From: Octopus bimaculoides | Lineage: Eukaryota | Direction: 5' to 3' | Length of the DNA stretch: 64,000 nt | Assembly: GCF_001194135.2 (NCBI RefSeq) | Contig: NC_068985.1 | Span: 119,224,310-119,288,309 of the forward strand | Notes under the pieces: model-generated | Databases searched by the model: none | What the model was told of the DNA's origin: nothing | Seen by the model: the letters and a program-made list of their open reading frames with translations, nothing else | Made by a program: the position numbers and the translations under genes | Part shown: one piece after another, positions 14,170 through 64,000 of the stretch | Position numbering within the stretch: position 1 is the first letter of the stretch | How the letters are laid out: each line of letters opens with the position of its first letter

Positions 14170-17100
14170 CAAAAGTATCATTTCTTAGAGACTTTGCACA
14201 ACGAGAGAAACCTTGTACAGAGAGAAAAGACAATATGTGTAGCTCTAAGTGAAATGCACCTGACTGAAGACATATTGGATGCAGAAGTACAGATTATGTA
14301 CTACTCAGAACTGACCACAGAATACGGAAACAAGGAGAAATAGTGATCATCATCCAAGAAGACCTGGCCACAAATGTCCACCTCTCCCATTCCAATACAG
14401 TGTGTGATGCATTAATAATGTATGTGATTGACCTTAATTTGATCATAAGCATTATCTACTGTCTTCCTGATGCAGCTAACCATAGAGATCATTCAGAGAT
14501 GCTTTTTCACTCATAAGCCAAACCTCAAATGAGGCCAGCCCACAGGTCAATATACTTTTAGCAGGGGACTTTAATTTTCTGAGTCTCAGCTGGTCTAAGA
14601 GTTATATCCAACCTGAAATTATACAACTGGACAGGAGAGATATGAATGCTGTTTTCAATGCTACTAAAAGACTTCCTCCTGCAGCAAATCATTGCCCGTC
14701 CAGTTAAGGGAAAAAAGATACTCGACCTAGTCTCTACCATCAATACAAACTTCACTCACAATGTTCAGATCATTCCCACCACTATTTCTGACCACATTAT
14801 ACAATTATCTGTATATGGTTCAAAGAGGGCAACACACACAAATAACATCAAACATGGTTCACTCCTCATGAATTTCAGGAAGGCCAAGTGGAAGGAAGTC
14901 GAAAATGAAATCTTCGAAACAAACTGGTATCAGCACATTGGCAACCTCAATGTTAACGAGGGAATGAAGTTTCTGTACGAAGAGTTAATGAAGATCTGTT
15001 GAAAACATGCCCCATACAAACACGCCTATTCCTGCAAGCACTTGGTTCCACGAGATAGATGGATACTAATGTGTAACAGAACCAAACCAACAATGGATAC
15101 TAATGTGTAACAGAACCAAACCAACAATGTGTAACAATGTGTAACTAATGTGTAACAGAACCAAACCAACAATGTGTAACAATGTGTAACTAATGTGTAA
15201 CAGAACCAAACCAACAAANNNNNNNNNNNNNNNNNNNNNNNNNNNNNNNNNNNNNNNNNNNNNNNNNNNNNNNNNNNNNNNNNNNNNNNNNNNNNNNNNN
15301 NNNNNNNNNNNNNNNNNNNNNNNNNNNNNNNNNNNNNNNNNNNNNNNNNNNNNNNNNNNNNNNNNNNNNNNNNNNNNNNNNNNNNNNNNNNNNNNNNNNN
15401 NNNNNNNNNNNNNNNNNNNNNNNNNNNNNNNNNNNNNNNNNNNNNNNNNNNNNNNNNNNNNNNNNNNNNNNNNNNNNNNNNNNNNNNNNNNNNNNNNNNN
15501 NNNNNNNNNNNNNNNNNNNNNNNNNNNNNNNNNNNNNNNNNNNNNNNNNNNNNNNNNNNNNNNNNNNNNNNNNNNNNNNNNNNNNNNNNNNNNNNNNNNT
15601 ACTAATGTGTAACAGAACCAAACCAACAATGGATACTAATGTGTAACAGAACCAAACCAACAATGTGTAACAATGTGTAACTAATGTGTAACAGAACCAA
15701 ACCAACAATGTGTAACAATGTGTAACTAATGTGTAACAGAACCAAACCAACAAAACAACTAAAAAACCAACTCTCAACAGATGAGATTTAGAAAAGAAAA
15801 ATAAACATCGAGCTTGACCTGAAACTATCTCATGAAAAAGAAATTCCACTAAGTGAACAGCAAGCAGTGTAAAATATAAAATCTATTTCTGTGTTCTATT
15901 TGCACTTTGCTAACCAAAAATCAGCTACATATAACCAGATTGGCTATCTAATGTATAAAAATGGATCATATATTAATGATGCATCACAAATATGCATGTT
16001 CTTGAGTAAACATTATGACAGTGCATTTTCCCAACCTATAGTTAACAAAATAATATATGAGCCAAATGAATTCTTTGATCCGCAGAACTCAGCTAATGAC
16101 CTAGTCATTACAGTCAATGACCTAGATTCAAATTCAGCATCTGGATCAGACAGTATCTCAGCCATACTACTAAAAACACACAAAAACTGCCTCATGAAAC
16201 CATTAAAGATACTATTTCAAAAGTCATTAGAATTCCCCGAACTATTGAAAGACACAATAATGCTACCAATACACAAAGGAAGGTAGTGGGGCTGAAGCTA
16301 AAGATTACAGACCTGTTTCTCTCACATCTAAAATTATCAAGTGCATTGTCTGAAATTAGTACATACCTTGTTGAAAACAACCTCATAGATGACATACAGC
16401 ATAGTTTTTGGATTGGACGAAGTTGCTTTTCACAACTATTACAGCACCATAACACTATTCTTAATAATCTCTTGAGAGGGAAGGACATTGACTGCATGCA
16501 CCTTGATTTTGTTAAGATGTTCAACAAGACTGATCATGGAATCATCTGTCATAATTTAAGGAATCTTGGTGTCTCAGGAAAACAAAGAGAATGGCTCTTT
16601 GACTCCCTCTGTGGTAGGAGCCAAACTGTTACTGGAAATGGTTTCCTCTCTGCAAAGTCAACTGTAATAAGTGGTATGCCTCAGGGAATGGTTCTAGGAC
16701 TGTAATTATTTATCATCAACCTATCACAAGTGTACTCATCTGAAATACCAAGTTATGCCGATCATGCAAAAATATCCATGGCTATCCAAGCTCCAGAAGA
16801 TACTGTCCCACTCCAAAATGAGCTACACCTCATTTATATCAATAGGTAGATTAAAACAATATGAAATATAATAAATAAGATTTCAGATTCTTCGTTACAA
16901 AGAGAATAAACACAAATCACAATATTTGATGCCAAAATGATTCAGAGTGCTAATGATATATGGGACTTAGGAGTAATCATATCAAATGATGCATCTTTCA
17001 TTAGCCACATCACCAAACTGATCTCTAAATGCAGATATTTCATAGGATGGATCTTGCAAACCTTTAGGACAAGAGAGCCAATAGTTAGGCTAACTCTATG

Positions 17101-19859: not shown

Positions 19860-20360
19860 TATTCTTGACTTACTCACAAGATATGCTGATAGCATTGACT
19901 ATTTGATTCATAGTTAATTGCCTGTCATCCATCAGCATGTGATAAATACAACCAATGTTTTCCTCATTGGTGGCAGTTGCAGGATGTCCAGACCTTGGGT
20001 TACATCCAGGACTCTCTGTTCCCTTCCTAAATTCAGCTGCCCACTTTTGCACTGTTGATAAAGCTGGAGCATCATCCTCTAATGTAGAAACTATGTCAGC
20101 ATAAATGTCAGTGGGGGGGGGGGGGCTAAACCCTTTTTTTTTTGCAGGTATTTGATAACACCATGATGCCAAGTTTTGTCCATTTTAAACAAAAATCACT
20201 ACTAGTTACTTTTGAAGTATTCTTTTAACTGTCAGATATCAGTTTACCTGAAAAGAAACAATGCAGTTATTAATAAGAGTTGTAAACAATGCATGCAAGA
20301 TTTCATAGCTCTAGTATCACCGTTTCATAGTTAGGCTATGAACTTTTCAGCCCATCCTCA
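19860..20360 (-). mobile_element. mariner transposase N-terminal (HTH) fragment
   Basis: MDKTWHHGVIKYLQKKGL..DIYADIVSTLEDDAPALSTVQKWAAEFRKG..PRSGHP; TIR-like GATGGGCTGAAAAGTTCATAG on the minus strand near 20337-20357. Confidence 0.85.
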
Positions 20361-24230: not shown

Positions 24231-25131
24231 TTAGGTGGTCAAGAAAGTTCTTGCGGAATTTTAAATTTTGGTTTTAAATAATGTATTTTCAAATTAATTT
24301 TCATTAAATTGCTTCTGAATTAGACATAACATATACGACAATTTCCAACCACTTGAAAGAGATTAGAAAAACAAAAATACTTGAGAAATGGGTGCCGCAT
24401 GAATTGAATGACAAACAAAAAAGACGCTGTTTTAAATTGTTGTCTTCCTTTCAACAAGAACGACCTGTTTCTCGACCGGATTGTGACTTGCGATGAAAAG
24501 TGGATTCTTTACGACAACCGGCGACGCTCAGCTCAGTGGTTGGACGCTGACGGAGCTCCATGGCACTTCCTGAAGCCAAAGTTGCACCAAAAGAAGGTCA
24601 TGGTGACTGTTTGGTGACCTGCAGCCAGTCTCATCCATCACAGCTTTTTGGATCCAGGCGAAACCATTTTGGCGGAGAAGTACTATCAGCAAATGGATGA
24701 AATGCATAAGAAACTCCGACAACAACAGCCAGCATTGGTCAATAGAAAAGGACCAATTCTTCTCCACAACAACGCTCAGCCGCACGTCGCACAACTGATC
24801 CTGCAGAAATTGAACAAATTGGGCTACGAAATTCTGCCTCATCCGCCATACTTACCTTACCTACTGACTACCACTTTTTCAAGCATCTCGACAACTTCCT
24901 GCATGAGAAATGCTTCATAAACCAAGACGATGCCAAACATGCCTTCAACGACTTCATCACCATCAGAACGCAGGATTTTTATGCTACTGACATAAATAAA
25001 CTTGTTTCACATTGGCAAAAGTGTGTTGATTCTGATGGTGTTTATTTCGATTAATAAAGTTTTGTTTGAGCTGAGATATGGGCATCTGAATTTAAAGGTT
25101 AAAAACTGCAAGAACTTTCTTGACAATCTAA
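24231..25131 (+). mobile_element. Internally deleted mariner (DD34D class) with both TIRs and TA TSD
   Basis: TIRs TTAG(G/A)T(G/T)GTCAAGAAAGTTCTTGC flanked by TA. DRIVTCDEKWILYDN, KPKLHQKKVMVTVW, ILLHNNAQPH, HPPYLP..DYHFF. HTH region missing. Confidence 0.93.
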
Positions 25132-30479: not shown

Positions 30480-30925
30480 GGTCGCGAAAGATTATTGAAT
30501 TTGCCAAAACGGGTGGGAACCGCTGAGAGAAAGAGAAATAAAGAAGGAGAATGGGAGAAAGAGAGAGAGTTTCTCTCTGATGCGTGGAAACGAAGAGACA
30601 GGAAATAGGTGCATTTGGCTGGAGAGAATTGTGGCTTCTGATTGATGAAAATCTGCTGACGTCATAGAGTTAATTTGAGGCACGGTAGGATTGGCAGACT
30701 ATTTATCAATGAGTCGAAACAGTTATCTCAGTTGACTTCGGTGGAACTTAATTGAAAAGGCACTCAAGTAACTATTCGTTTGTTAGTAAATACCAAAAAT
30801 TAGTTTTTAGCTTTCGTATAAACACATCAAAAGAAAATAAAACACTTCAATAATATATTGTTTTATCCTCATTATACAAAGCGTTAAGTAGCTATTTTTT
30901 TTCTTCTACTTGGATTCACGCAACG
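30480..30925 (+). promoter_or_regulatory. Putative promoter and 5' UTR of the + strand gene
   Basis: Abrupt onset of CpG retention, GA-repeat tract, perfect CRE TGACGTCA at 30657-30664 and reverse CCAAT (ATTGG) at 30690-30694, ~235-270 nt upstream of the ATG. Confidence 0.55.
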
Positions 30926-30971
30926 ATGGAATTAAGACTAGGTCATATAATCTTTGTGGCTCTTCTGGTCC
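30926..30971 (+). CDS. Probable first coding exon: signal peptide MELRLGHIIFVALLV (phase-1 donor)
   Basis: ACGATGG start context, basic n-region plus hydrophobic core, donor C|GTAAGT. The link to the downstream exons is inferred. Confidence 0.6.
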
Positions 30972-33931
30972 GTAAGTATTTTGATAATTCATTCCATTAC
31001 AGTGTTATTAAAGATGTTTGCCCGTATTTATAAATACAGGTACATACTCTCATCTCTCTACCTATTTAGATTTTCTCACAAGAAATACTTCTTTACTCTT
31101 TCTCTGTCTCTCTCTCAAATATTTCATATTAATGTTTTTTATAACAGGTTTCTTGCATCATCGTTATTCCGAGGTCTGAATAATAAGACTCTGCTTCTAA
31201 TGTAAAATATTATCTAAATTCTACTTTTTTTGTTTTGAATATTTTTTTTCACGCTTGTAAACTCAAATGTTTATTTCCCTAATACATGGTGTGGTAGAAT
31301 CAAAATTGTCTTCATAAAAGTCCCTTTCTGTAATTCTTTGTTTTCTTTTCTCTTTTATGTAGTTCTTTTTTTCTTTTCTAATTGTCTACACTTGTAAGTA
31401 CCACTAATTGACTGATTTCAGGTTAACCGAAAGAGCTATACTAAAAGGTGTAACCGTAGCTATTCCGTCCTTGGTGCTAATGTAGTTAGAGTATTTAGGG
31501 AACGCATTACTTTTTTTCTCTCCTCAAAACTAGTTGTAATTTGAGGTTAACGGGAACTGCTATTTCAAGCATGCCTGTCGACCACGTTGTTTCCAGTTAT
31601 ATATGTCATTTTTATTATTGAATTTACATAATTTTGTAATGAAAACGCTAGAGTTAACTTAAAAATTTAAAGCAAAAGAAAATGAAGTTTTAAGGCTTTA
31701 GTAAAGTTTACTATTAATAAGGGACATTTTTTTTTTTCATTCACGTGAATCAATGGAAAACTGTCGGTATGACAAAATTTTGCTATCGAATCTCGATCTC
31801 AGCCAAACACCGAATCTTAATCCTTCGAAAATACGTGCGTATAGATTATCCTCCTCTGAAAGAAAGAAAGAAAAAGTGTCGGTTGAAATAAAGATTTATC
31901 ATTGGAAAATTCTCATAAGTTCAAGTTTGGTATTACTGCATTTTCGCTCGTCCATTCTTTTCCTTCTGCTCTTATCTTAATCTTTAGACTGATTAAAATT
32001 GAACTTCGGCGTCGGAAAAAAAAGTTACAGCTTAAAAATAAATTTTAGTAAAAATCGTTATTTGAAACAAGAGCATTTTTTTTTTTTTTCATTTAATTAA
32101 TAGCTTTTTTTTTCCTTGAAAGAAACTTTACGTATTAGGTAATTTTTAAAAAGATATTTTATGGTGAATAAAATTTTATTGGTGAATTTTTCATAGAAAA
32201 ATATCCTCCACTTATTAGTAAAACGGTATGAAATGAATTTTTTATTTAGGCAGCAAGTTTTCGAAGCTTTTTCGTCTGGAAATCTCAAAATTATAGTGTG
32301 AAAATATATTTAATAAACAAATTAATAAAGAAGTTACATTCCATTTACGCGAAAGAAATTATACAACTTCTGATAGATGAGGTTGAATTAAGTTTCGAAC
32401 CTCGGAGGAAGCCCTCTAGATTTTTTTTTCCATTAACGTTTGTGTTAAAGGTTTCAGCGCCATACAACTTCCATCTTAATTGTTTAGTACATCTAAAAGT
32501 GTACTAAACTAAGTGTCTGAGCGCGGTATCTTTGATAGTGAGTTTTGACGGACACAAATAAACCACGAACTCTTGCTTTGGCCTACTTGAAATCTTACAT
32601 ATTTTTCTATGTATTTATGTGTGTGTAAGGGGTGGGGGTAACAAGGCCATGCCTCTTTACAACTTAATCGCCTCGTTTATTAATTAAAGCATAATTTTTG
32701 TTAGAAATTTGTAGATTAAAATGTTAAGGAAGAAAAAATATTTATAAACAAAATAAATCGATTAGCATTTAAATATTGCACAACGTAATGTCATATATGA
32801 GGAATGGGACACTGCAGATTATTATGCAGAAATACTTTTCTTCGATCTCTATATAGTAGACTACTTTATTACTGCTTTGACTTGTAGAATAAACTAAACT
32901 CCAACTAGAAATTTATTTTTCCGTATATTTGTATTTCGTATTGGTATAACCAGGTTGTGATAGATCGTTTTCAGTGTTGTGCAGCGACCATGAATATATT
33001 ATTGAATGTTTGAAAAGGCATAAACTTTTCTGGGTGTAATAAAAAATGAAAACTTTTGATATAATTTTCATTGTATTTCCTTGAAATTTCATTTCATAAA
33101 AATGCATTAAAATGTGAGGAAAATGATCAGGGACACTACATACTAGTTATGTAAAACAAAAACTAACTTTTGTTTTGGTAAACCTTATTAGGCACTTTTT
33201 CGTTATGTGTCTATAAAATGACTGATGAGAAAGTGAAAAAATAAATGATAATCAGTAAAAAATACAATAATTTTTTTCTAAATTATTTAAGATAGGGTTG
33301 AACATTACAAACCCATAACATCTATGCATTGTGGCAAAAGTTAACTGATATGAGCTGATTGAAAGGAAATGTTCGCATGATAATTGGATGTGGATTATTG
33401 AATTTCTTGTATTGATGGAATTAATTCATAATTTAATCAAAATATAATTTGTACTACTTCTTGAATTCTAACAAACACTGAGAATTAAACGGAAATAAGA
33501 TACTTTTCGGTTTGAATTTGTGGATAAGAAACGATTATCAGTTTTTTTCTTTTCACTTTCAAAAGTCTTTTTGATGTTCATGTTGACCAGTTTAAATATA
33601 CTCACAACGTAAGAATACTCCTTATAATAGAATTTATGCATATCTATCAAAATATGTAACCGAAACTTTTCTGGCTCTTCCACTTATCACTTAGTACCCC
33701 CTCTCTAAACACCTCATACCTCACACTGCTTTCTGAAGTAGAAATAGCACCCAAATCTCCCTCAATTCATACCACATCGTAAATAAATACTCTAAATAAA
33801 CATTTTCATGGCTAGAATGCATTTCATCATAGTTCTGTTCTATGAACGCTGATCTGGAGCTAAACTAGTACTTTGAGCCAGCGAGGGAAAGCTATATTTA
33901 CGGGTTTTTACGGCCATTTGTTCTGAAAGAC

Positions 33932-39911: not shown

Positions 39912-40799
39912 TTAAAATGTGTATTGCTCAGCAATTTGAGCAAAGAGGTGCTCAAATAGTCTAATAGAGTACCTCTTCCGCCACATGAATTCAATTAAAT
40001 ACGTGGGAAACAACTCGGATGAGGTACTATAAAGTTGCTGATATTTTCGCTTAGCATGCGCCCACATTCCTTCTACATGATTTGTGTGTACACCTGTGGC
40101 TTCATCAACAAATGAAACTGAATGGTTTACCGTTAAATGCAGGAACCCTTGCTGCTGCAAATTACGATAACGTGCCCATTCATCTGTGAAAATGATGCTC
40201 CCTGGACGGACATGTTGCCGGATAATGGATTCCAAGGAATCCATGAACCGGCTATTATCCGGCCATATAGATAAGAAGCAATTGGTGGGATTGTCCAATT
40301 CAACCCCACCCAAGTGCCATCGTAGTGCGCACCCCGCCGATACTTTTGGTGCATAAATTTAGACTCATCGATGGCAACTACGACATCAGGGCCGCCAATC
40401 ATTAATGGATTATCAATTAGGTGTTGTGCCAGAATATCTCTGCAGAAATTGGCTCAATCCACCACAGTGGACCAACTCGCAATTTTTAGCTCGTGCATAA
40501 TTTTCTGCAAGGGTTCATCAATGGAACACCAATACTGAAAGAGCAGCAGTATTACTATTTTGGAAAAACGATCCTTTTCTAATGTAAAAGCATTTTCGAC
40601 ACTGTCGAGCAGTGCACTTCCAACTATACTCATCTTGAAGTCACGGAAATTTCACAAACGAACGATTGTGGCCACAGTCACAGACATGAGCTTCTGCTAA
40701 AAGTCCATATGATTTCAGCCATTCAATTAGATGGTCCTGGTCACAGCTGATTCCAAACAAATCCAATAGGCGGAATGGAGGACATTGCATGATATTCAT
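39912..40799 (-). pseudogene. Merlin/IS1595 (ISXO2-like) DDE transposase pseudogene, near full length
   Basis: ATG at 40799: MNIMQCPP..WLKSYGLLAEAHVCDCG..WKC..QCRK; then [72 protein letters not shown]. Stops and frameshifts present. Confidence 0.92.
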
Positions 40800-50589: not shown

Positions 50590-50930
50590 ACTTTAAAAAA
50601 AGCCCCCCTTTGGTCATGAATGACCATGGGATTGCACCTAGAAAGTTCCCGATGAGGCACAAGTCCAGGCAAGTTTGTTTTATGGAAGACCAACAATCGC
50701 CTGTGCATGCTAGCCTCCCCTCTCCATGCCACCAATGTTTTCCAAGGGAAAAGCAAAGGGGCCGATACAGCTTGGCACCAGTGATGTCACAACTCATTTC
50801 TACAGCTGAGTGAATTGGAGCAATGTGAAATGAAGTGCCTTGCTCAAGAGCACAACACACAGCCTAGTCCAGGAATGAGACCCACAACCACATGATTGGA
50901 AGCCCAATGCTCTAACCACTGAGCCACAGC
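50590..50930 (-). mobile_element. SINE family C, near full length
   Basis: tRNA-like head at 50870-50930 and CORE-like GTGCTCTTGAGCAAGGCACTT; another piece lies at 54900-55100. Confidence 0.8.
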
Positions 50931-52224
50931 ATTTTAAAATGGTTTTTGTTTTAATTGTTTTAAAATCGTGATGTCCTTAATTATTGGTGTAGATCCTGTA
51001 ATTTTTTTTTTTTTTGTANNNNNNNNNNNNNNNNNNNNNNNNNNNNNNNNNNNNNNNNNNNNNNNNNNNNNNNNNNNNNNNNNNNNNNNNNNNNNNNNNN
51101 NNNNNNNNNNNNNNNNNNNNNNNNNNNNNNNNNNNNNNNNNNNNNNNNNNNNNNNNNNNNNNNNNNNNNNNNNNNNNNNNNNNNNNNNNNNNNNNNNNNN
51201 NNNNNNNNNNNNNNNNNNNNNNNNNNNNNNNNNNNNNNNNNNNNNNNNNNNNNNNNNNNNNNNNNNNNNNNNNNNNNNNNNNNNNNNNNNNNNNNNNNNN
51301 NNNNNNNNNNNNNNNNNNNNNNNNNNNNNNNNNNNNNNNNNNNNNNNNNNNNNNNNNNNNNNNNNNNNNNNNNNNNNNNNNNNNNNNNNNNNNNNNNNNN
51401 NNNNNNNNNNNNNNNNNNNNNNNNNNNNNNNNNNNNNNNNNNNNNNNNNNNNNNNNNNNNNNNNNNNNNNNNNNNNNNNNNNNNNNNNNNNNNCCTTCTC
51501 TCCCTTCCCTCTCTCTCTCTCTCTCTCTCTCCACCCCTTCTCTCTCCCTACCCCTTCTCTCTCTCTTCCCCTATCCCCCCCTCTCTCCCCTCTCCACTAT
51601 ATCCTGGGGGTGATCCTAATCTTGTGAGATAAATTTATTAGAATTTGTATAGCCTATTAGATCAGTGGTGCTGATAGTTTTACCCTTTCTTGTCTTAATT
51701 ACTGAAACAAATTGTCAACGCAATGTTGCTGAAAAGATTATTGTGTGTAGCTATAAATACATATTTCTTGACTCGGTGCTTCCCTAACACCAGAAAGCTG
51801 GTTATGTCAGCTAATTTGTTTGTATCCTAAACTGTTATCTAATACAGATTATTTACTAAAGCATAAAGAATTTTTTGCTCACAGCATTCAGTACATCATC
51901 CCTTGACTTATGCAGTGGCTGCTGCTATCTTTTATCTGTTGTTTAAATCATTGGACTGTGGCCCTTGCCTTCAAGGGCTTTTCATCTAACAAATTGAACC
52001 CAGCACTTTTTCCAAAGTTTGGTACTTCTGTCAGTCTCTTTTGCTGAACCACTAAGTTATGGGGACATTAACTAAAACCAGTTGTGAAGCATGCTCTCAT
52101 ACCCACACATGAGATTTCAATTTCTGTTTACCAAATCCACTCGCAAGGCTTTGGTCAGCCCAGAGCTGTAGTGGAAGAAACTTTCCCCCAGGCAGCTCCC
52201 ATGTGTTTGATAAGCAAGTTTCTT

Positions 52225-57959: not shown

Positions 57960-58069
57960 GGCTATTCCAGAGTTCAAGGAATGTACCAGACCTATGTATA
58001 CTTCCTGTTATTTTGATAAAGTTGATGTGTATGGTGTCTTTGATTACATGTGTGGCCCAGGACGTGGAG
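57960..58069 (+). CDS. Internal exon (phase 2 to 1) of a Cys-rich secreted protein: AIPEFKECTRPMYTSCYFDKVDVYGVFDYMCGPGRG
   Basis: Acceptor TTCTTTATATCTTTTAACAG|, donor GAG|GTAATT, 110 nt, open frame continuous with the next two exons. Confidence 0.85.
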
Positions 58070-59579
58070 GTAATTAGTTGCTGTTTTGCTTTCAATAATT
58101 GACAAAATGTTTTTGCTGATTTTAGATTCATTTCTTTTTGCCGCTTGATCAGAGAAGGTGGGGCAGCATTAGTAGCTTATGTGCAGGGTCTCTGAGACTA
58201 GTCAAAGTAACTTAAGATTATCTTATTTTCAGATGGTAAACTGGTCTGAATGTTTATAATTGTTTGTAGTCTCCTGCAGTCACTGAAGGAGATTGTTAAA
58301 CCTGGCTATTTAGTCTGGATGCTTACAACAGATGAGGAGTTATGTGAGTTCCTAGATGGATGCCCCATGGGGCATTTGGCACTCCGTGTTCAAAATCATG
58401 TTGAGGCCAAGTATGCTTTCATCCTTTTGTAGTCAGTGTAAAAGAAAAAAAAAACCCAGAGCAGTGTATTAGTGGAACTGTAACAATGTTGGACCAGATA
58501 CCTTGTGGTATTTGTTTTGGCTCTTTGTGTTCTGAGTTCAAATCCCATCATGCCCTGCTTGGTTGTTAAATGGATCTTTGTTGGTTTCAGTGATGATTAT
58601 TTGGTTGTTTGAACAACTGAATTAGCTGCTTATTAAAATAGCTCCTCTTGGGAATTGCATACAGTTTAGTCTTTGAAGAAGCCAACAAGTGACTGGTGGG
58701 CAACTCAAGAGGATGTGCAAGAAAAATTAGGAAAACATTAAGTGCAGATTCACAAGGAAATGTGCCCTATGTGAACCATTAATAGATTGACTACAAGTGT
58801 GAAAACCACCAGCAGTACCTGGCCACTTTAAGATCTGAACATTGAGTACCTGGATACAGAGTATAAGAAGGCTGAGGGTAGTCATGGTTTAGGATGGGAT
58901 GCTCTGATCAAATTCAAATGGTAGTTCTTCATCCTCACCTACGTGTGAATAGATTGCCTTCATTGTGTTCATTTGTCTTTTAATCCATTTTTCATTCTGG
59001 TATAGGTTGGATTAGGCTCTATTTTGGGGCAGTGTTTTACAGTTAAATGCCCTTCCTATTAATAATCATTATTTTTTGAGCAAGTTTTTTTTTTTTCAAA
59101 TTTTGTTGCTCTTTGAAAACTGAGTACCAGTATATATTATTACCTGCAGGAAATGATAAACATGGCATCACTCTCTTTGCTCAAATGTAACATGCAGATA
59201 TAGGTACTAATGTGCATACAACACCCTGGCCCCATGATAGACTACTATATGGTTTCCATCAAATCAATAATTCCATTTACAAGGCTTTGACCAATCTGAG
59301 GCCAGTAGACACTTGACCAAGATGTCACATATTGGAATAGAACCTAAAACGTGGTTAGAAAGCATACTTCATATCTATACAGTCGTGTGTGTCCGTGTGT
59401 CCATTTACTTGTGTAACTTAAAATATGCTTCAACACATGAATTCACATAAAGAATCTTGCAAATCAAATACAAAAACGAAATCGTAATACAGGGTTGTCC
59501 ATAAATTACCATTACAATTTGAAGAATTCAGAAAAAGATGAAAAATAAGGATAGCTTAGAGTTTATTGGAAAAGCATAT

Positions 59580-59800
59580 ACAAGGCAGTGCTGAAAATTT
59601 CCTGGCTTTGGGTAATAAAAAAAAAAAAAAAATTCAGGCGGATGAGTTATGATTTTATTCAACATGTTCCCCTCTCAGATTCACACATTTGCAGTGGTCC
59701 TTCAATTATTCTAAGCCCTGTAAAAGAAGTCAGACAGCCAAGCCTCCAACCAGGTCTTTCATGCTAGCCTTTAAGCCAGGAACTTTTCATTACTCCCTCA
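59580..59800. mobile_element. mariner-derived MITE
   Basis: Imperfect TIRs GCTGAAAATTTCCTGGCTT and AAGCCAGGAACTTTTCA. Confidence 0.6.
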
Positions 59801-60270
59801 TATATATAATATATATATACATACATATATATGAAAACTTTAATATTTAACCTGCAAAGGAATTGATTGAGAGATCTCAACTTCAATAGATACAATAAAT
59901 TATGGAAGTTGTAAAGATAGTTTATGGATACCTTGCTGCATGCCTCATTTATAGCCCTGTATGTTTACTATTTGTGATATGTATGTATTAATGGGCCTTA
60001 TTGGCAAAATAAATGAAAGAATTAATCTATTGGTAAAAATCATTAAAGCACTGGACAAAATGCTTTGTGGTGTTTAGTTATCACCCTCTACTTCTGAGTT
60101 CAACTTCCAAGATTAATTTTGCTCTTCGTCCTTCCAGGGTCAATTAACAAGTACCAGTCATGTGCTGGGGTTGATTTGACTGTTCCCTCCTCCGTTTGAT
60201 GCCATGTGCCTATATTGAAAAGTATAAGGGCAGTTGATTGGCAGAGATGCTAGTGTCAGAATACTTTATA

Positions 60271-60507
60271 CAGAGTGTTCAAAAAAGTCTCTCTGCAGTG
60301 AATTTTTTTTCTCCAAGATGTATTTCAAAACATGTGTAGAAGAGTCAGCTTATGTATTGAAAATGGACGACACTTTCAACAATACCTCTTATAAAGTTTT
60401 CTAAAGTCTTGTAAAGTCTAATATATTCTTTTGTAGTCTTATATCATCTTATAAATATTTATTTTGCAATAAAACACTTACTGTGGAGAGACTTTTTGAA
60501 CACCCTA
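60271..60507. mobile_element. Tc1-like MITE with TA TSD
   Basis: TIR CAGAGTGTTCAAAAAAGTCTCTC / GAGAGACTTTTTGAACACCCTA, flanked by TA. Confidence 0.8.
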
Positions 60508-60641
60508 TATTTGTAGCAGCCCTTTACATTCTGAGTTCAGGTCCTACTAACCTTAACTTTGCTTTTCACCCTTATAAAGATGAGGTGGGGAGCAGGGCCA
60601 ATAAAATATCAGTCAAGTACTGGGATGAGTGTAATCAACTG

Positions 60642-60674
<33 letters not shown>

Positions 60675-61157
60675 GCACCCTGAATTTATGGCTTTGTATC
60701 TGTTAGAAACCTTTATTATTATTGGTGGTGGTGGTGGTGGGGGAATAACAGATTGTTGGATATTGGATTTAATGTATTTCTGTTTAGTTCTTTGCCACTA
60801 TGATTTAACCCTTTTGTTACCTTGTTTCAGTTGAAATATTCTGTTTAACTTTAAATTAAAAAAGAAAATTAAGACTATAGTAAAATAACTTGTCCTTATT
60901 AAGCTGATGTTTCAAAATATAAATTAACAGAACATTTTGATGTAGGGTTTGTACCATAGAACCAAGAGTGGTCTTGGTGCAGGTTGGTATCGAAATGGTT
61001 AATCTCAATTTCTTCAGGATTTGGCTTTATCATCTCTCCAGGGTCAATAGATTAAAATACATGAGTAAGCAGGGCATCTTTTGAAACTAATTCAACTGCA
61101 GTCTTTATCCTTTTGCCAGTGTAAGAAATCATTTTGTTTTATAATTTTTGTCTTCAG

Positions 61158-61275
61158 AGTTCTTGGAATATTCACAATGTTTCAACGATACCAACTATCT
61201 CAAAAAGTCAAAGACATGCAACCAGAAAATGAAATCTCAGCGCTTACATATACATAATATTGAAGACGTTTGTGA
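61158..61275 (+). CDS. Internal exon (phase 1 to 2): EFLEYSQCFNDTNYLKKSKTCNQKMKSQRLHIHNIEDVC
   Basis: Acceptor TTTTTGTCTTCAG|, donor GA|GTAAGT, 118 nt, open frame; N-glycosylation sequon NDT. Confidence 0.88.
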
Positions 61276-62334
61276 GTAAGTATAATTTGATTATAGGCTA
61301 GTTTTAATTGACCTTTTATTTTTGTGTGTGTGTGTGTGGAGGGGGGGGGGGGGGATTTTTAAATTTTTTTTTTTTGTTCAAGTGGCTGTCAAGATCAGCT
61401 ACTAAGGAGGTATGATATAGAGATCTTTCATTTTTCTTAGTTGCCACATGTTGTTGCTCTTAGGAGCACATTTAAAATGCTCTCCTGATATATTTGATGG
61501 CGTATAAGATGCACAGGCATATTAGATGCATTCCAATTTTAGCTGCGCATATTCAAGAAAATAAGATTTTTATGCATTAAAGCTTATGGGAGGCCAGACT
61601 TTGCATAGCACTTTTAGGTGGGGGGGAAAAAGCGTATCTTGTATCCCATCAAATAGAAAAGTTTTATGTGATAACCAATCATATACAATTGCAAACATTG
61701 ATCTAAGCACTTATTTACATCTTTTATGTGATTTTAAAAATTTTCTTGGTTTTGATAGAATCCAATGAAATGTTTTGAATGAAATTTAAAGATGTTTTAT
61801 AATGTAAAAGTTTGATGTTAACAGAAATATGAAAGCATTGCTACAGCGTGTATGGCTACCAAAATATTGGTTAATGCTATATAATTTCTCAATTTTCATC
61901 ATCCTAGTTTTAACACCAATTTATCCATGTTTGCATGGGTTAGACAGTTGATTGGGAGATATTTTCTACAGCTGGATGCCCTTCTTGTTGCTCACACTTA
62001 GCTGTTTCCAAGCATGGTAATATTTACCTGTGGCTAAACATGTTTTTGCAAGATATTGGGGATGAATGTCAGTTTGTATATCAATGATATTCACTTAGTG
62101 CTACCATGTGGTGTCAAGACAAGAAGACACACACACACATTTCTGTTTATCTAACCCAGTCACAAGTAATTGTTCATGCAAGGAAACACTAGCACTCACG
62201 CTTTTCAGTTTTTGTCTACCAAGTCTATTCATAAAGCTCTGGCAGAAGTCCCCTGCCCAAAGTACCTCATAGTGGGACTGCACCTGAAACAGTGGTTGAC
62301 AATGGTCTAATATCGAGAATGAATTATATTATAT

Positions 62335-63150
62335 ACAAGGTGGTATCAAAAGATTCTCGGATTAGTTATGTAAAATAACTTTACCTAACCATTTCCTTCG
62401 AAATAGTCACCTCATGCAGCAATACACAGATCCCAGCATTCCTGCCACTTTTGGAATCTGGTCTGGAAGTCGTTTTCCATAAACAAGTTGAGGACCTTCT
62501 GTGATTTACTCTGGATCTCGACAACAGTGTTAAAACAGCCACCTTTTGAACTGTCTTTTCATTTTGACGAAAAGATGGAAGTCTTCAGGTGCTAAATCTT
62601 GCGAATAGGGTGGGTGCGGAAGTGAAACCATATTTTAGGCAAGAAAGTTATGAGCGAGGAGAGCTCAGTGAAGAATCCGATTCTTCGTGCTCCACAGATC
62701 CGGTGGCTTTCATTGAATGTCCTCCCTCAAAAGCTTTGGCCATGACATGAATTCTCAATGCACAGTACCACATTTCCAAGGGTGATGCTTGTGGCAGGTC
62801 TTCCAGATCATTTATCTTCGAGATGTGCTTCCACTTTTGAAACGTCTGTGCGTACAATGACCCATTGCCTTGTGACTGTAAGCTTGCCAAAGCATGCCCA
62901 ATGTCTCTGTAGCAGACTTCCATAGTTTAATGCAAAATTTCATGTTTGCTCTTTGTTTCAACTTCCTGTCCATGACAAAAGTTGCAGACTACAACATATG
63001 CATGATCACAAAAACACAAATTTCACAACTTGCAAAGTAAACATAGTGATGTCACTCAGTACACTGCCTCATAAAGATCACTGCTAGCTCTCACTGCACA
63101 TGCATCCATGTGCTGGCATCTGTTGGTGCACTACAGAACTAGATGGAGAA
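62335..63150 (-). mobile_element. Internally deleted mariner relic
   Basis: C-terminal KGGCFNTVVEIQSKSQKVL..DFQTRFQKWQECWDLCIAA*GDYFEG; SGRPATS in the HTH region. Confidence 0.8.
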
Positions 63151-63940
63151 CTCTTTTATAGTGATTTGCATTATATTTAGTTTATTTTATTTTCTTTTTC
63201 TCTGTGTGCATGATTTTCACAGATTGTGCTGAAACCATTTTTGGGCCTACTTGTTTACCTATATGCTTGTCTGTGTCATGTGAGTATGGTGTGGGAACGG
63301 GGGTTTGTGTCACACTTAGATGCGACATTGTACGATAATTGTTTATAAGCAGTGGCTTCTTTTCATGTCTGTGAAAACTTGTCTGGTTATGGAGGAAATA
63401 TTACCTTACTTGCAATGGTTGGTGACAGGAAGGTCATCCAGCTATATAAACTTTGCCCCAACATCCCAACATGTCACTCAGAATTCTGGGTGATTCAAGT
63501 AAGCATGGATAAGTAATCATTAAAACAATGATGATGATACATATATGACGAGCTTTTTTCAGTTTCCATCTACCAAATTTACTCAAGGCTTAGAGGTTGG
63601 TTTGGGGCTGTGATAGAAGACACTTATGTTGTGCTAAATAAACTGTTTTTTGTTTGTTTCAGCATGGATGTCTGTTTTTTTTTTTATAACTTTTTGTTTC
63701 ATATTAGTATATATTTTTGTTGAGAAAGAAAGAAATAAGCATAGATTGTACTGTCAAGGCACATAGTTCCTTATTCACATGTACCCCTTCTCTAAATAAG
63801 GTGCAATGCAATGGTTTATGGTCATAGGGTTCATTTTTGTCGTTTATTACCTTAAGCTCAGTTAGTCTTTCTCTTTCATCTTTTTTCTAATTAAATAGTT
63901 TGATTGGTTAATTTGCATTATTCTTTTTATTTAATTTCAG

Positions 63941-64000
63941 TTTGGAAAAGGAAGTAAGGACCTGTGCATTGAACATTGCAGGTGAATGTAGTCCCGGTTC
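63941..64000 (+). CDS. Next exon (phase-2 start, continues past the window end): (D)LEKEVRTCALNIAGECSPG
   Basis: Acceptor ATTCTTTTTATTTAATTTCAG|; open in the frame required by the upstream exon; repeats the C-x8-C-x7-C spacing. Confidence 0.85.

What the first reader, a model, noticed from the sequence alone, without database searches (positions are those of the whole stretch)
57960..64000. Unannotated Cys-rich secreted protein built from a duplicated two-exon module
Seen: three exons absent from the ORF track splice in frame to xAIPEFKECTRPMYTSCYFDKVDVYGVFDYMCGPGRGEFLEYSQCFNDTNYLKKSKTCNQKMKSQRLHIHNIEDVCDLEKEVRTCALNIAGECSPG. The second half (C-DLEKEVRT-C-ALNIAGE-C) has C-x8-C-x7-C spacing. 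The first half fits the same pattern if the preceding exon ends in Cys plus 2 nt, and a phase-2 intron sits at the same position in both halves. Inference: an internally duplicated helical disulfide domain resembling DUF19/DUF1397-type invertebrate secreted proteins, possibly a lineage-expanded cephalopod family (skin, saliva, chemosensory or immune). The function is unknown.
Basis: partly seen in the sequence, partly recalled or inferred. Interest (0 to 1): 0.75.

Follow-up and report, generated by a model that had tools for sequence, protein, structure and literature searches.

The report
Octopus membrane protein with two cysteine modules
The three exons are real and belong to an expressed octopus gene that databases already list as "uncharacterized"; it encodes a small cell-surface membrane protein with two cysteine-rich helical modules that faintly resemble vertebrate neuritin and the first domain of repulsive guidance molecules.

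Summary
Exons 57960-58069, 61158-61275 and 63941-64000+ splice exactly as claimed. A 1063-nt spliced transcript contig (Logan, SRR32601320) matches the window at 100% across both junctions.

They are exons 3-5 of a six-exon gene encoding 219 aa. Exon 1 (signal peptide) lies at 30926-30971. Exon 2 is hidden in the assembly gap 51019-51493. The rest lies beyond the window.

The gene is not unannotated. It is Octopus bimaculoides LOC106882895 (XP_014789202.1), an N-truncated 150-aa model. The O. sinensis orthologue LOC115211861 is full length.

So is the duplicated two-exon module: intron phases run 1-2-1-2-1, with six Cys per module and a shared C-x8-C-x7-C core.

The protein is membrane-anchored, not freely secreted. 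It has a transmembrane helix at about 183-205 and a short basic tail.

Pfam gives no DUF19 or DUF1397 hit. The only hits are weak and below threshold: neuritin (E about 3e-4) and RGM_N. No paralogues were found. The protein evolves fast (dN/dS about 1), yet the frame, length and all 12 Cys are conserved.

The parts
30795..30925 (+). 5' UTR (at least this much; the transcript contig starts here)
   Evidence: L001 bases 1-131 are 100% identical to the window
30926..30971 (+). Exon 1 coding part: MELRLGHIIFVALLV + 1 nt (most of the signal peptide); donor GTAAGT at 30972; phase-1 intron
51019..51493 (.). Assembly gap (475 N) that hides exon 2 (127 nt, residues 16-58, ends TGT CG|)
   Evidence: Exon 2 is in transcript L001 178-304 but absent from the window. 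O. sinensis sequence flanking its exon 2 aligns to window 50778-50973 and 51497-52109.
57960..58069 (+). The truncated RefSeq model starts at ATG 57994.
58070..61157 (+). Intron 3 (phase 1), 3088 nt, with SINE-like and simple-repeat pieces
61158..61275 (+).
61276..63940 (+). Intron 4 (phase 2), 2665 nt; about 1.7 kb longer than in O. sinensis (991 nt)
63941..64000 (+). The full exon is 137 nt and runs 77 nt past the window end. Exon 6 (transmembrane helix, tail, stop) is off-window.

Best explanation
The region holds exons 3-5 of Octopus bimaculoides LOC106882895, an expressed six-exon gene for a 219-aa type I membrane glycoprotein.

Shown:
- Signal peptide, residues 1-19, with an A-x-A cleavage motif.
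- Two tandem six-cysteine modules, residues about 20-94 and 95-179. Each is encoded by an exon pair flanked by phase-1 introns and split by a phase-2 intron one codon after its third Cys.
- One transmembrane helix (about 183-205) and a 14-residue basic cytoplasmic tail.

Inferred, about 55%: each module is a disulfide-stapled three-helix bundle of the neuritin/CPG15 and RGM N-terminal-domain type. The shared framework is C-x(4-12)-C-x(17-27)-C-x8-C-x7-C-x(14-27)-C. The gene arose by duplication of an exon pair.

Inferred, weaker: it acts at the cell surface as a ligand or co-receptor that presents two helical binding modules. This follows the analogy of neuritin, a membrane-tethered ligand, and N-RGM, which binds BMPs. 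Fast change of exposed residues around an invariant core (residues 82-111) would fit a co-evolving partner.
For: Gene and splicing:
- The spliced transcript is 100% identical to the window.
- phmmer of exon A finds the 219-aa protein P0014.
- Its cluster contains XP_014789202.1 / LOC106882895. The O. sinensis orthologue P0017 is 79% identical.
- An exact six-exon model in O. sinensis has intron phases 1,2,1,2,1.

Topology: Kyte-Doolittle maximum 2.49 over residues 184-203, and one NDT sequon.

Selection: 219 codons without indel or stop in three species, 12/12 Cys kept, and a 30-residue invariant run (p=0.015).

Family resemblance:
- Pfam NRN1 E=2.8e-4 to 5e-4 with two stretches; RGM_N E=0.007-0.1.
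- hhalign, all in the Cys register: NRN1 P=0.009, M1 vs RGM_N P=0.015, M2 vs NRN1 P=0.033, M1 vs M2 P=0.065.
- 0 of 10 shuffled controls, including 6 with Cys positions fixed, hit NRN1 or RGM_N.
- The AlphaFold2 ectodomain model is all-helical, with three helices per module plus helices H62-70 and H74-83 between them, pTM 0.61.

Background: N-RGM binds BMPs (PMC8063088). Neuritin is a small GPI-anchored surface and soluble factor (PMC12877949).
Against: - Every family match is below Pfam's gathering score: NRN1 15.6-21.5 bits versus 27, RGM_N 7-17 bits versus 24.2.
- Module 2 alone hits nothing.
- The two modules show no significant residue similarity by Smith-Waterman (p=0.59).
- Foldseek of the model against PDB finds nothing, including the RGM N-domain entries (E>=1.7). 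The model has only medium confidence (pLDDT 63).
- PDB sequence searches give only spurious hits.
- The anchor differs: a transmembrane helix here, GPI in neuritin and RGM.
- dN/dS of about 1 is also compatible with weak constraint.
- No functional or tissue data are available.
Confidence: 0.55

Rival explanations
1. It is a taxonomically restricted octopod (orphan) cysteine-rich membrane protein. Its likeness to neuritin and RGM_N is convergent or due to chance: a common way to staple short helices, not common descent.
For: - All family hits are below the curated thresholds.
- Foldseek finds no match.
- No homologue outside Octopus appeared in 5.8 billion (word-indexed) or 1.84 billion (HMMER, exon 3 only) proteins.
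- Fast evolution (dN/dS about 1) is typical of young or lineage-specific genes.
Against: - NRN1 is the top Pfam hit in all three orthologues, and RGM_N (E 0.04-7.8) is also listed for each.
- Both families share the same six-Cys order with the identical x8/x7 core.
- The alignments include non-Cys matches, for example FC-A-x-x-x-F/Y-x-x-CT.
- Shuffles with Cys positions fixed lose the hit.
Confidence: 0.3
2. One reading: the protein is a member of the invertebrate DUF19 / DUF1397 helical disulfide families.
For: - There are twelve Cys in about 155 residues, arranged as two six-Cys halves.
- Human neuritin itself hits DUF19 weakly (E=0.0088, residues 39-111 to profile positions 10-83 of 157). 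DUF19 may therefore be a distant relative built from two such modules.
Against: No DUF19 (PF01579) or DUF1397 (PF07165) hit appeared for the 95-aa peptide, the full protein, the ectodomain or either module, even at E<=10.
Confidence: 0.08
3. It is a transcribed but functionally decaying locus, with neutral evolution and no protein-level function.
For: Pairwise dN/dS is 0.89-1.5 across three Octopus species. The RefSeq model in O. bimaculoides is truncated.
Against: - The truncation is an assembly artefact: exon 2 lies in a gap.
- The 660-nt ORF has no indel or stop in three species, although the neighbouring introns differ by 10-18% and carry many gaps.
- All 12 Cys, the signal peptide and the transmembrane helix are kept.
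- The invariant block at residues 82-111 carries synonymous changes at codons 83 and 104.
Confidence: 0.04

Closest known systems
Neuritin / CPG15 (NRN1, Pfam PF15056)
   Same: Small secretory-pathway protein tethered to the membrane. One six-Cys domain with spacing 9/24/8/7/27, against 7/27/8/7/14 and 12/17/8/7/23 in the octopus modules. It is the best Pfam hit (E 2.8e-4 to 5e-4, two stretches). hhalign gives 32% identity over 47 columns in the Cys register.
   Different: The score is below the gathering threshold. The octopus protein has two tandem modules instead of one. It has a transmembrane helix plus cytoplasmic tail instead of a GPI signal. It evolves fast, whereas neuritin is highly conserved (PMC12877949). 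It was found only in Octopus.
RGM N-terminal domain (N-RGM, Pfam PF06535; PDB 4UI2, 4UHY, 6Z3M)
   Same: Same six-Cys order with the x8/x7 core (spacing 4/22/8/7/21). Module 1 aligns at 31% identity, P=0.015, with the motif FC-(K/R)-A-...-CT. Weak Pfam hit at E 0.007-0.1.
   Different: There is no von Willebrand-D-like domain, no GDPH autocleavage site and no GPI signal. The score is below threshold. Foldseek did not retrieve RGM entries.
DUF19 (Pfam PF01579, nematode 12-Cys domain)
   Same: Twelve cysteines in about 150 residues. Human neuritin weakly matches the first half of the DUF19 profile, which hints at a two-module build like the octopus protein.
   Different: The octopus sequences give no detectable match to the DUF19 model. 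The family is known from nematodes.
DUF1397 (Pfam PF07165, insect haemolymph proteins)
   Same: Only the general idea of a secreted invertebrate cysteine-containing helical protein.
   Different: No Pfam match at any threshold tried.

Membership tests
Neuritin family (PF15056) | Match to the family HMM at or above the gathering score (27 bits) | tested here: not met
   20.6 bits (P0014), 18.9 (P0016), 15.6 (P0017), 21.5 (ectodomain). The E-values of 2.8e-4 to 0.019 are suggestive only.
Neuritin family (PF15056) | Six-Cys framework with a C-x8-C-x7-C core | tested here: met
   Human NRN1 (validated at 134 bits) has spacing 9/24/8/7/27. Octopus modules have 7/27/8/7/14 and 12/17/8/7/23.
Neuritin family (PF15056) | C-terminal GPI-anchor signal and a single domain | tested here: not met
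   Hydrophobic helix at 183-205 followed by the tail KQYKQKNAISHNRFY; two modules.
RGM N-terminal domain (PF06535) | Match to the family HMM at or above the gathering score (24.2 bits) | tested here: not met
   7.3-17.1 bits.
RGM N-terminal domain (PF06535) | Fold superposes on solved N-RGM (PDB 4UI2/4UHY/6Z3M) | tested here: inconclusive
   Foldseek of the pLDDT-63 two-module model gave no PDB hit with E<1.7. The model confidence is too low to count as a refutation.
RGM family | Following vWD-like domain with a GDPH autocleavage site, and a GPI anchor | tested here: not met
   The 219-aa sequence has neither. No RGM_C hit.
DUF19 (PF01579) | Match to the family HMM (gathering score 23.2 bits) | tested here: not met
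   Not listed even at E<=10 for the peptide, full protein, ectodomain or modules.
DUF19 (PF01579) | About 12 conserved Cys in about 130-157 residues (family description recalled from memory) | tested here: inconclusive
   The octopus ectodomain has 12 Cys between residues 21 and 174. A count alone is not diagnostic.
DUF1397 (PF07165) | Match to the family HMM | tested here: not met
   No hit at E<=10.

The most novel reading that the evidence does not exclude
The octopus protein would be the first protostome relative of neuritin. In this reading it is a transmembrane, tandem-module form whose module 1 is more similar to both vertebrate neuritin and the RGM N-domain than those two are to each other. 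It would thereby link neuritin, N-RGM and perhaps nematode DUF19 into one ancient bilaterian six-Cys three-helix superfamily of cell-surface ligand-binding modules. In octopods this module would be evolving rapidly, as recognition proteins do.
Probability: 0.3. Interest if true: 0.6.

Novelty: new variant of a known kind. Interest (0 to 1): 0.35.

Why it matters
The practical result is a corrected gene model. The RefSeq and UniProt protein for O. bimaculoides LOC106882895 lacks its first 69 residues, which include the signal peptide and half of module 1. The cause is that exon 2 falls in an assembly gap.

On the biology, neuritin/CPG15 is an activity-regulated plasticity factor whose receptor is still debated. 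I recall it being known mainly from vertebrates, and I did not check that here. A cephalopod membrane protein built from two neuritin/RGM-N-like modules would give an independent lineage in which to study this fold in a complex nervous system. It might also unite several 'orphan' cysteine-rich families. As it stands, the family link is weak and no function or expression site is known, so this is a modest lead rather than a discovery.

Tried and rejected
- Searches with the 95-aa peptide found nothing: Pfam, PDB sequences, and the word-indexed 5.8-billion-protein search. That last search returned nothing although the protein is in the collection, so its negative result was misleading.
Submitting the contiguous exon-A translation solved this.
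- I looked in the window for an upstream exon ending TGY+NN|GT and for a signal-peptide exon with a phase-2 donor. Both searches failed, because exon 2 is in a gap and exon 1 has a phase-1 donor.
- A Pfam scan of all plus-strand ORF pieces from 48.6 to 58.1 kb found nothing.
- Amino-acid composition and GC tests for coding potential were mixed: exon A at the 89th-97th percentile, exon B at the 23rd-34th, exon C at the 98th-99.6th.
- Cys richness alone is uninformative in this TG-repeat-rich window.
- Smith-Waterman comparison of the halves and of the full modules was not significant.
- The full-length AlphaFold2 model was unusable (pLDDT 47), and its Foldseek search was meaningless.
- The ectodomain model was better (pLDDT 63) but had no PDB match.
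- A PDB profile search gave only spurious G-alpha-s hits.
- There is no PDB entry for neuritin.
- A literature search for the SRA run numbers gave nothing relevant, so the tissue of origin is unknown.
Full report
OBSERVATION. The window is an AT-rich (GC about 0.35), repeat-rich draft assembly with 4917 N. The three claimed exons exist at the stated coordinates. Exon A is 57960-58069, with acceptor ...TTTTAACAG| and donor GTAATT. Exon B is 61158-61275, with acceptor ...TCTTCAG| and donor GTAAGT. Exon C starts at 63941 after ...AATTTCAG| and runs off the window. Joined, they read the quoted 95-aa peptide with eight Cys and no stop.

INTRINSIC EVIDENCE WAS ONLY MODERATE. Cys-rich open frames are common here because of TG-rich repeats. 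Composition tests were mixed: exon A at the 89th-97th percentile, exon B at the 23rd-34th and exon C at the 98th-99.6th. With a strict splice-site filter, only 22 exon-frame candidates per strand exist in the 64 kb, and exons A and B are among them. The exons are single-copy in the window. Searches with the spliced peptide found nothing in Pfam, PDB or the word-indexed protein collection.

IDENTIFICATION. The exhaustive HMMER search accepts only contiguous window translations. I therefore submitted the 36-aa exon-A translation. It found one protein, P0014 (219 aa, 100% identity at residues 59-94). P0014 contains the whole 95-aa peptide at residues 59-153. Its 90% cluster holds XP_014789202.1 / UniRef A0A0L8FJN0, named 'uncharacterized protein LOC106882895 [Octopus bimaculoides]'. 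That model has 150 aa and starts at the internal Met70 inside exon A. The cluster also holds a second 219-aa sequence, P0016. A full-length search added O. sinensis LOC115211861 (P0017, 219 aa, 79% identity) and nothing else. The gene is therefore annotated, as uncharacterized, and no paralogues were detected. A transposase ORF elsewhere in the window matches O. bimaculoides proteins at 91% identity, which fits that species as the source.

TRANSCRIPT AND GENE STRUCTURE. P0014 is encoded on a 1063-nt Logan contig from run SRR32601320. That contig is 100% identical to window 30795-30971, 57960-58069, 61158-61275 and 63941-64000, with the intervening DNA removed at GT-AG borders. Both proposed junctions are confirmed. 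One caveat: the run type is not known to me. A contig lacking introns of 27, 3.1 and 2.7 kb is most simply spliced RNA. P0016 comes from two further runs.

Bases 178-304 of the contig form exon 2 (127 nt, ending ...TTT TGT CG). They are absent from the window. O. sinensis sequence on either side of its exon 2 aligns to window 50778-50973 and 51497-52109, so exon 2 lies in the 475-N gap 51019-51493. This explains the truncated RefSeq model.

In O. sinensis an exact six-exon model reproduces P0017. Exon lengths are 46, 127, 110, 118, 137 and 122 nt, and intron phases are 1, 2, 1, 2, 1. The O. bimaculoides transcript aligns exon by exon.

THE DUPLICATION CLAIM. It does...AAFC|R|AIPEF. Module 1 (exons 2+3, residues 16-94) has Cys spacing 7/27/8/7/14. 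Module 2 (exons 4+5, residues 95-179) has 12/17/8/7/23. Each module is flanked by phase-1 introns and split by a phase-2 intron one codon after its third Cys. Residue-level similarity between the modules is not significant (Smith-Waterman p=0.59). hhalign gives P=0.065, but in the predicted register. The duplication is thus supported by gene architecture and Cys framework, not by sequence identity, which implies an old event.

PROTEIN ARCHITECTURE. The features are as follows:
- A signal peptide, MELRLGHIIFVALLVHANA|Y.
- A 162-residue ectodomain with 12 Cys and one NDT sequon.
- A strong hydrophobic helix at about 183-205 (Kyte-Doolittle 2.49).
- A basic tail, KQYKQKNAISHNRFY.

It is a type I membrane protein, not a soluble secreted one. 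The AlphaFold2 ectodomain model (three-sequence alignment) has pLDDT 62.8 and pTM 0.61. It is all-helical, with three helices per module and two short helices (H62-70, H74-83) between them. Module 2 is the better-defined half, at pLDDT 70-84. The full-length model was poor.

FAMILY. There is no DUF19 or DUF1397 hit for any construct at E<=10. The best Pfam hit is neuritin (NRN1): E=5e-4 for P0014, 1.8e-3 for P0016, 0.019 for P0017 and 2.8e-4 for the ectodomain, with two stretches. All are below the 27-bit gathering score. RGM_N follows at E=0.007-0.1 on module 1.

Its Cys spacing is 9/24/8/7/27. Real RGM N-domain sequences from PDB (6Z3M, 4UHY) have 4/22/8/7/21. All share six Cys in the same order with the identical x8/x7 core.

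The hhalign results, all in the Cys register, are:
- Octopus versus neuritin: P=0.009, 32% identity over 47 columns.
- Module 1 versus RGM_N: P=0.015, 31% identity.
- Module 2 versus neuritin: P=0.033.
- Module 2 versus RGM_N: P=0.17.
- Control, RGM_N versus neuritin: P=0.38.

None of ten shuffled ectodomains, six of them with Cys positions fixed, hit either family. Against this, Foldseek of the model found no PDB match, and PDB sequence searches were spurious. I rate neuritin/RGM-N-like descent at about 55%. Because the curated thresholds are not met, I do not file the protein as a member of either family.

EVOLUTION. Pairwise Nei-Gojobori dN/dS is 0.89 (O. bimaculoides versus the P0016 species), 1.04 (versus O. 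sinensis) and 1.5 (P0016 species versus O. sinensis). Yet the 660-nt frame has no indel or stop in three species, while the flanking introns are 82-90% identical and carry gaps. All 12 Cys are kept. Residues 82-111, which span the module boundary and the glycosylation site, are invariant (p=0.015) despite synonymous changes at codons 83 and 104. This looks like a constrained scaffold with rapidly changing surfaces.

MECHANISM. The shown parts are the expressed gene, its exon structure, its topology and its two six-Cys helical modules. The rest is inference. Each module would be a three-helix bundle held by three disulfides, as in N-RGM. The protein would sit on the cell surface as a ligand or co-receptor. 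N-RGM binds BMP ligands (PMC8063088). Neuritin is a GPI-tethered and shed factor (PMC12877949, PMC6006204). The partner, tissue and function are unknown.

VERDICT. 'Unannotated', 'secreted', 'DUF19/DUF1397' and 'lineage-expanded' are not supported. Interest is modest: a corrected gene model, plus a weak but testable link to the neuritin and RGM N-domain families.

Noticed in passing
window 51019-51493: A 475-N assembly gap swallows exon 2 of LOC106882895. This is why the public O. bimaculoides protein (XP_014789202.1 / A0A0L8FJN0, 150 aa) lacks its first 69 residues, including the signal peptide.
   Followed up: yes
window 61427-63346 (intron 4): Intron 4 is 2665 nt here but 991 nt in O. sinensis. 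About 1.7-1.9 kb has no counterpart in the O. sinensis locus. It looks like a transposon relic by eye (minus-strand ORF 62648-62923), but Pfam did not confirm a transposase and no clear terminal inverted repeats were found.
   Followed up: partly
window 39915-40313 (-): An intact 133-aa ORF with an ISXO2-like transposase domain (DDE_Tnp_IS1595, 73.9 bits). It is 91% identical to several O. bimaculoides UniRef proteins, which marks a multi-copy element and points to the source species.
   Followed up: yes
window 24648-24917 (+), 19873-20172 (-), 16286-16702 (+): Transposon relics in intron 1 and upstream: a mariner Transposase_1 fragment (25.6 bits), a Mos1-type HTH_48 fragment (22.9 bits, just below threshold) and a reverse-transcriptase fragment (RVT_1, 23.3 bits, below threshold).
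   Followed up: partly
protein residues 82-111 (window 58030-58069 plus 61158-61207): A 30-residue block spanning the boundary between the two modules and the only N-glycosylation sequon is invariant in three Octopus species (p=0.015). The rest of the protein changes at dN/dS of about 1. This block may be the functional core.
   Followed up: partly
tool behaviour, vs 27/34: The word-indexed protein search returned no hit for the 95-aa spliced peptide, although a 100% identical 219-aa protein is in the same collection. It was found later by HMMER and by a full-length query. The 'no hit' was therefore a false negative.
   Followed up: yes
human neuritin vs Pfam: Human neuritin gives a weak sub-threshold match to the first half of the nematode DUF19 profile (E=0.0088, profile positions 10-83 of 157). 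This hints that DUF19 could be a tandem pair of neuritin-like modules.
   Followed up: no
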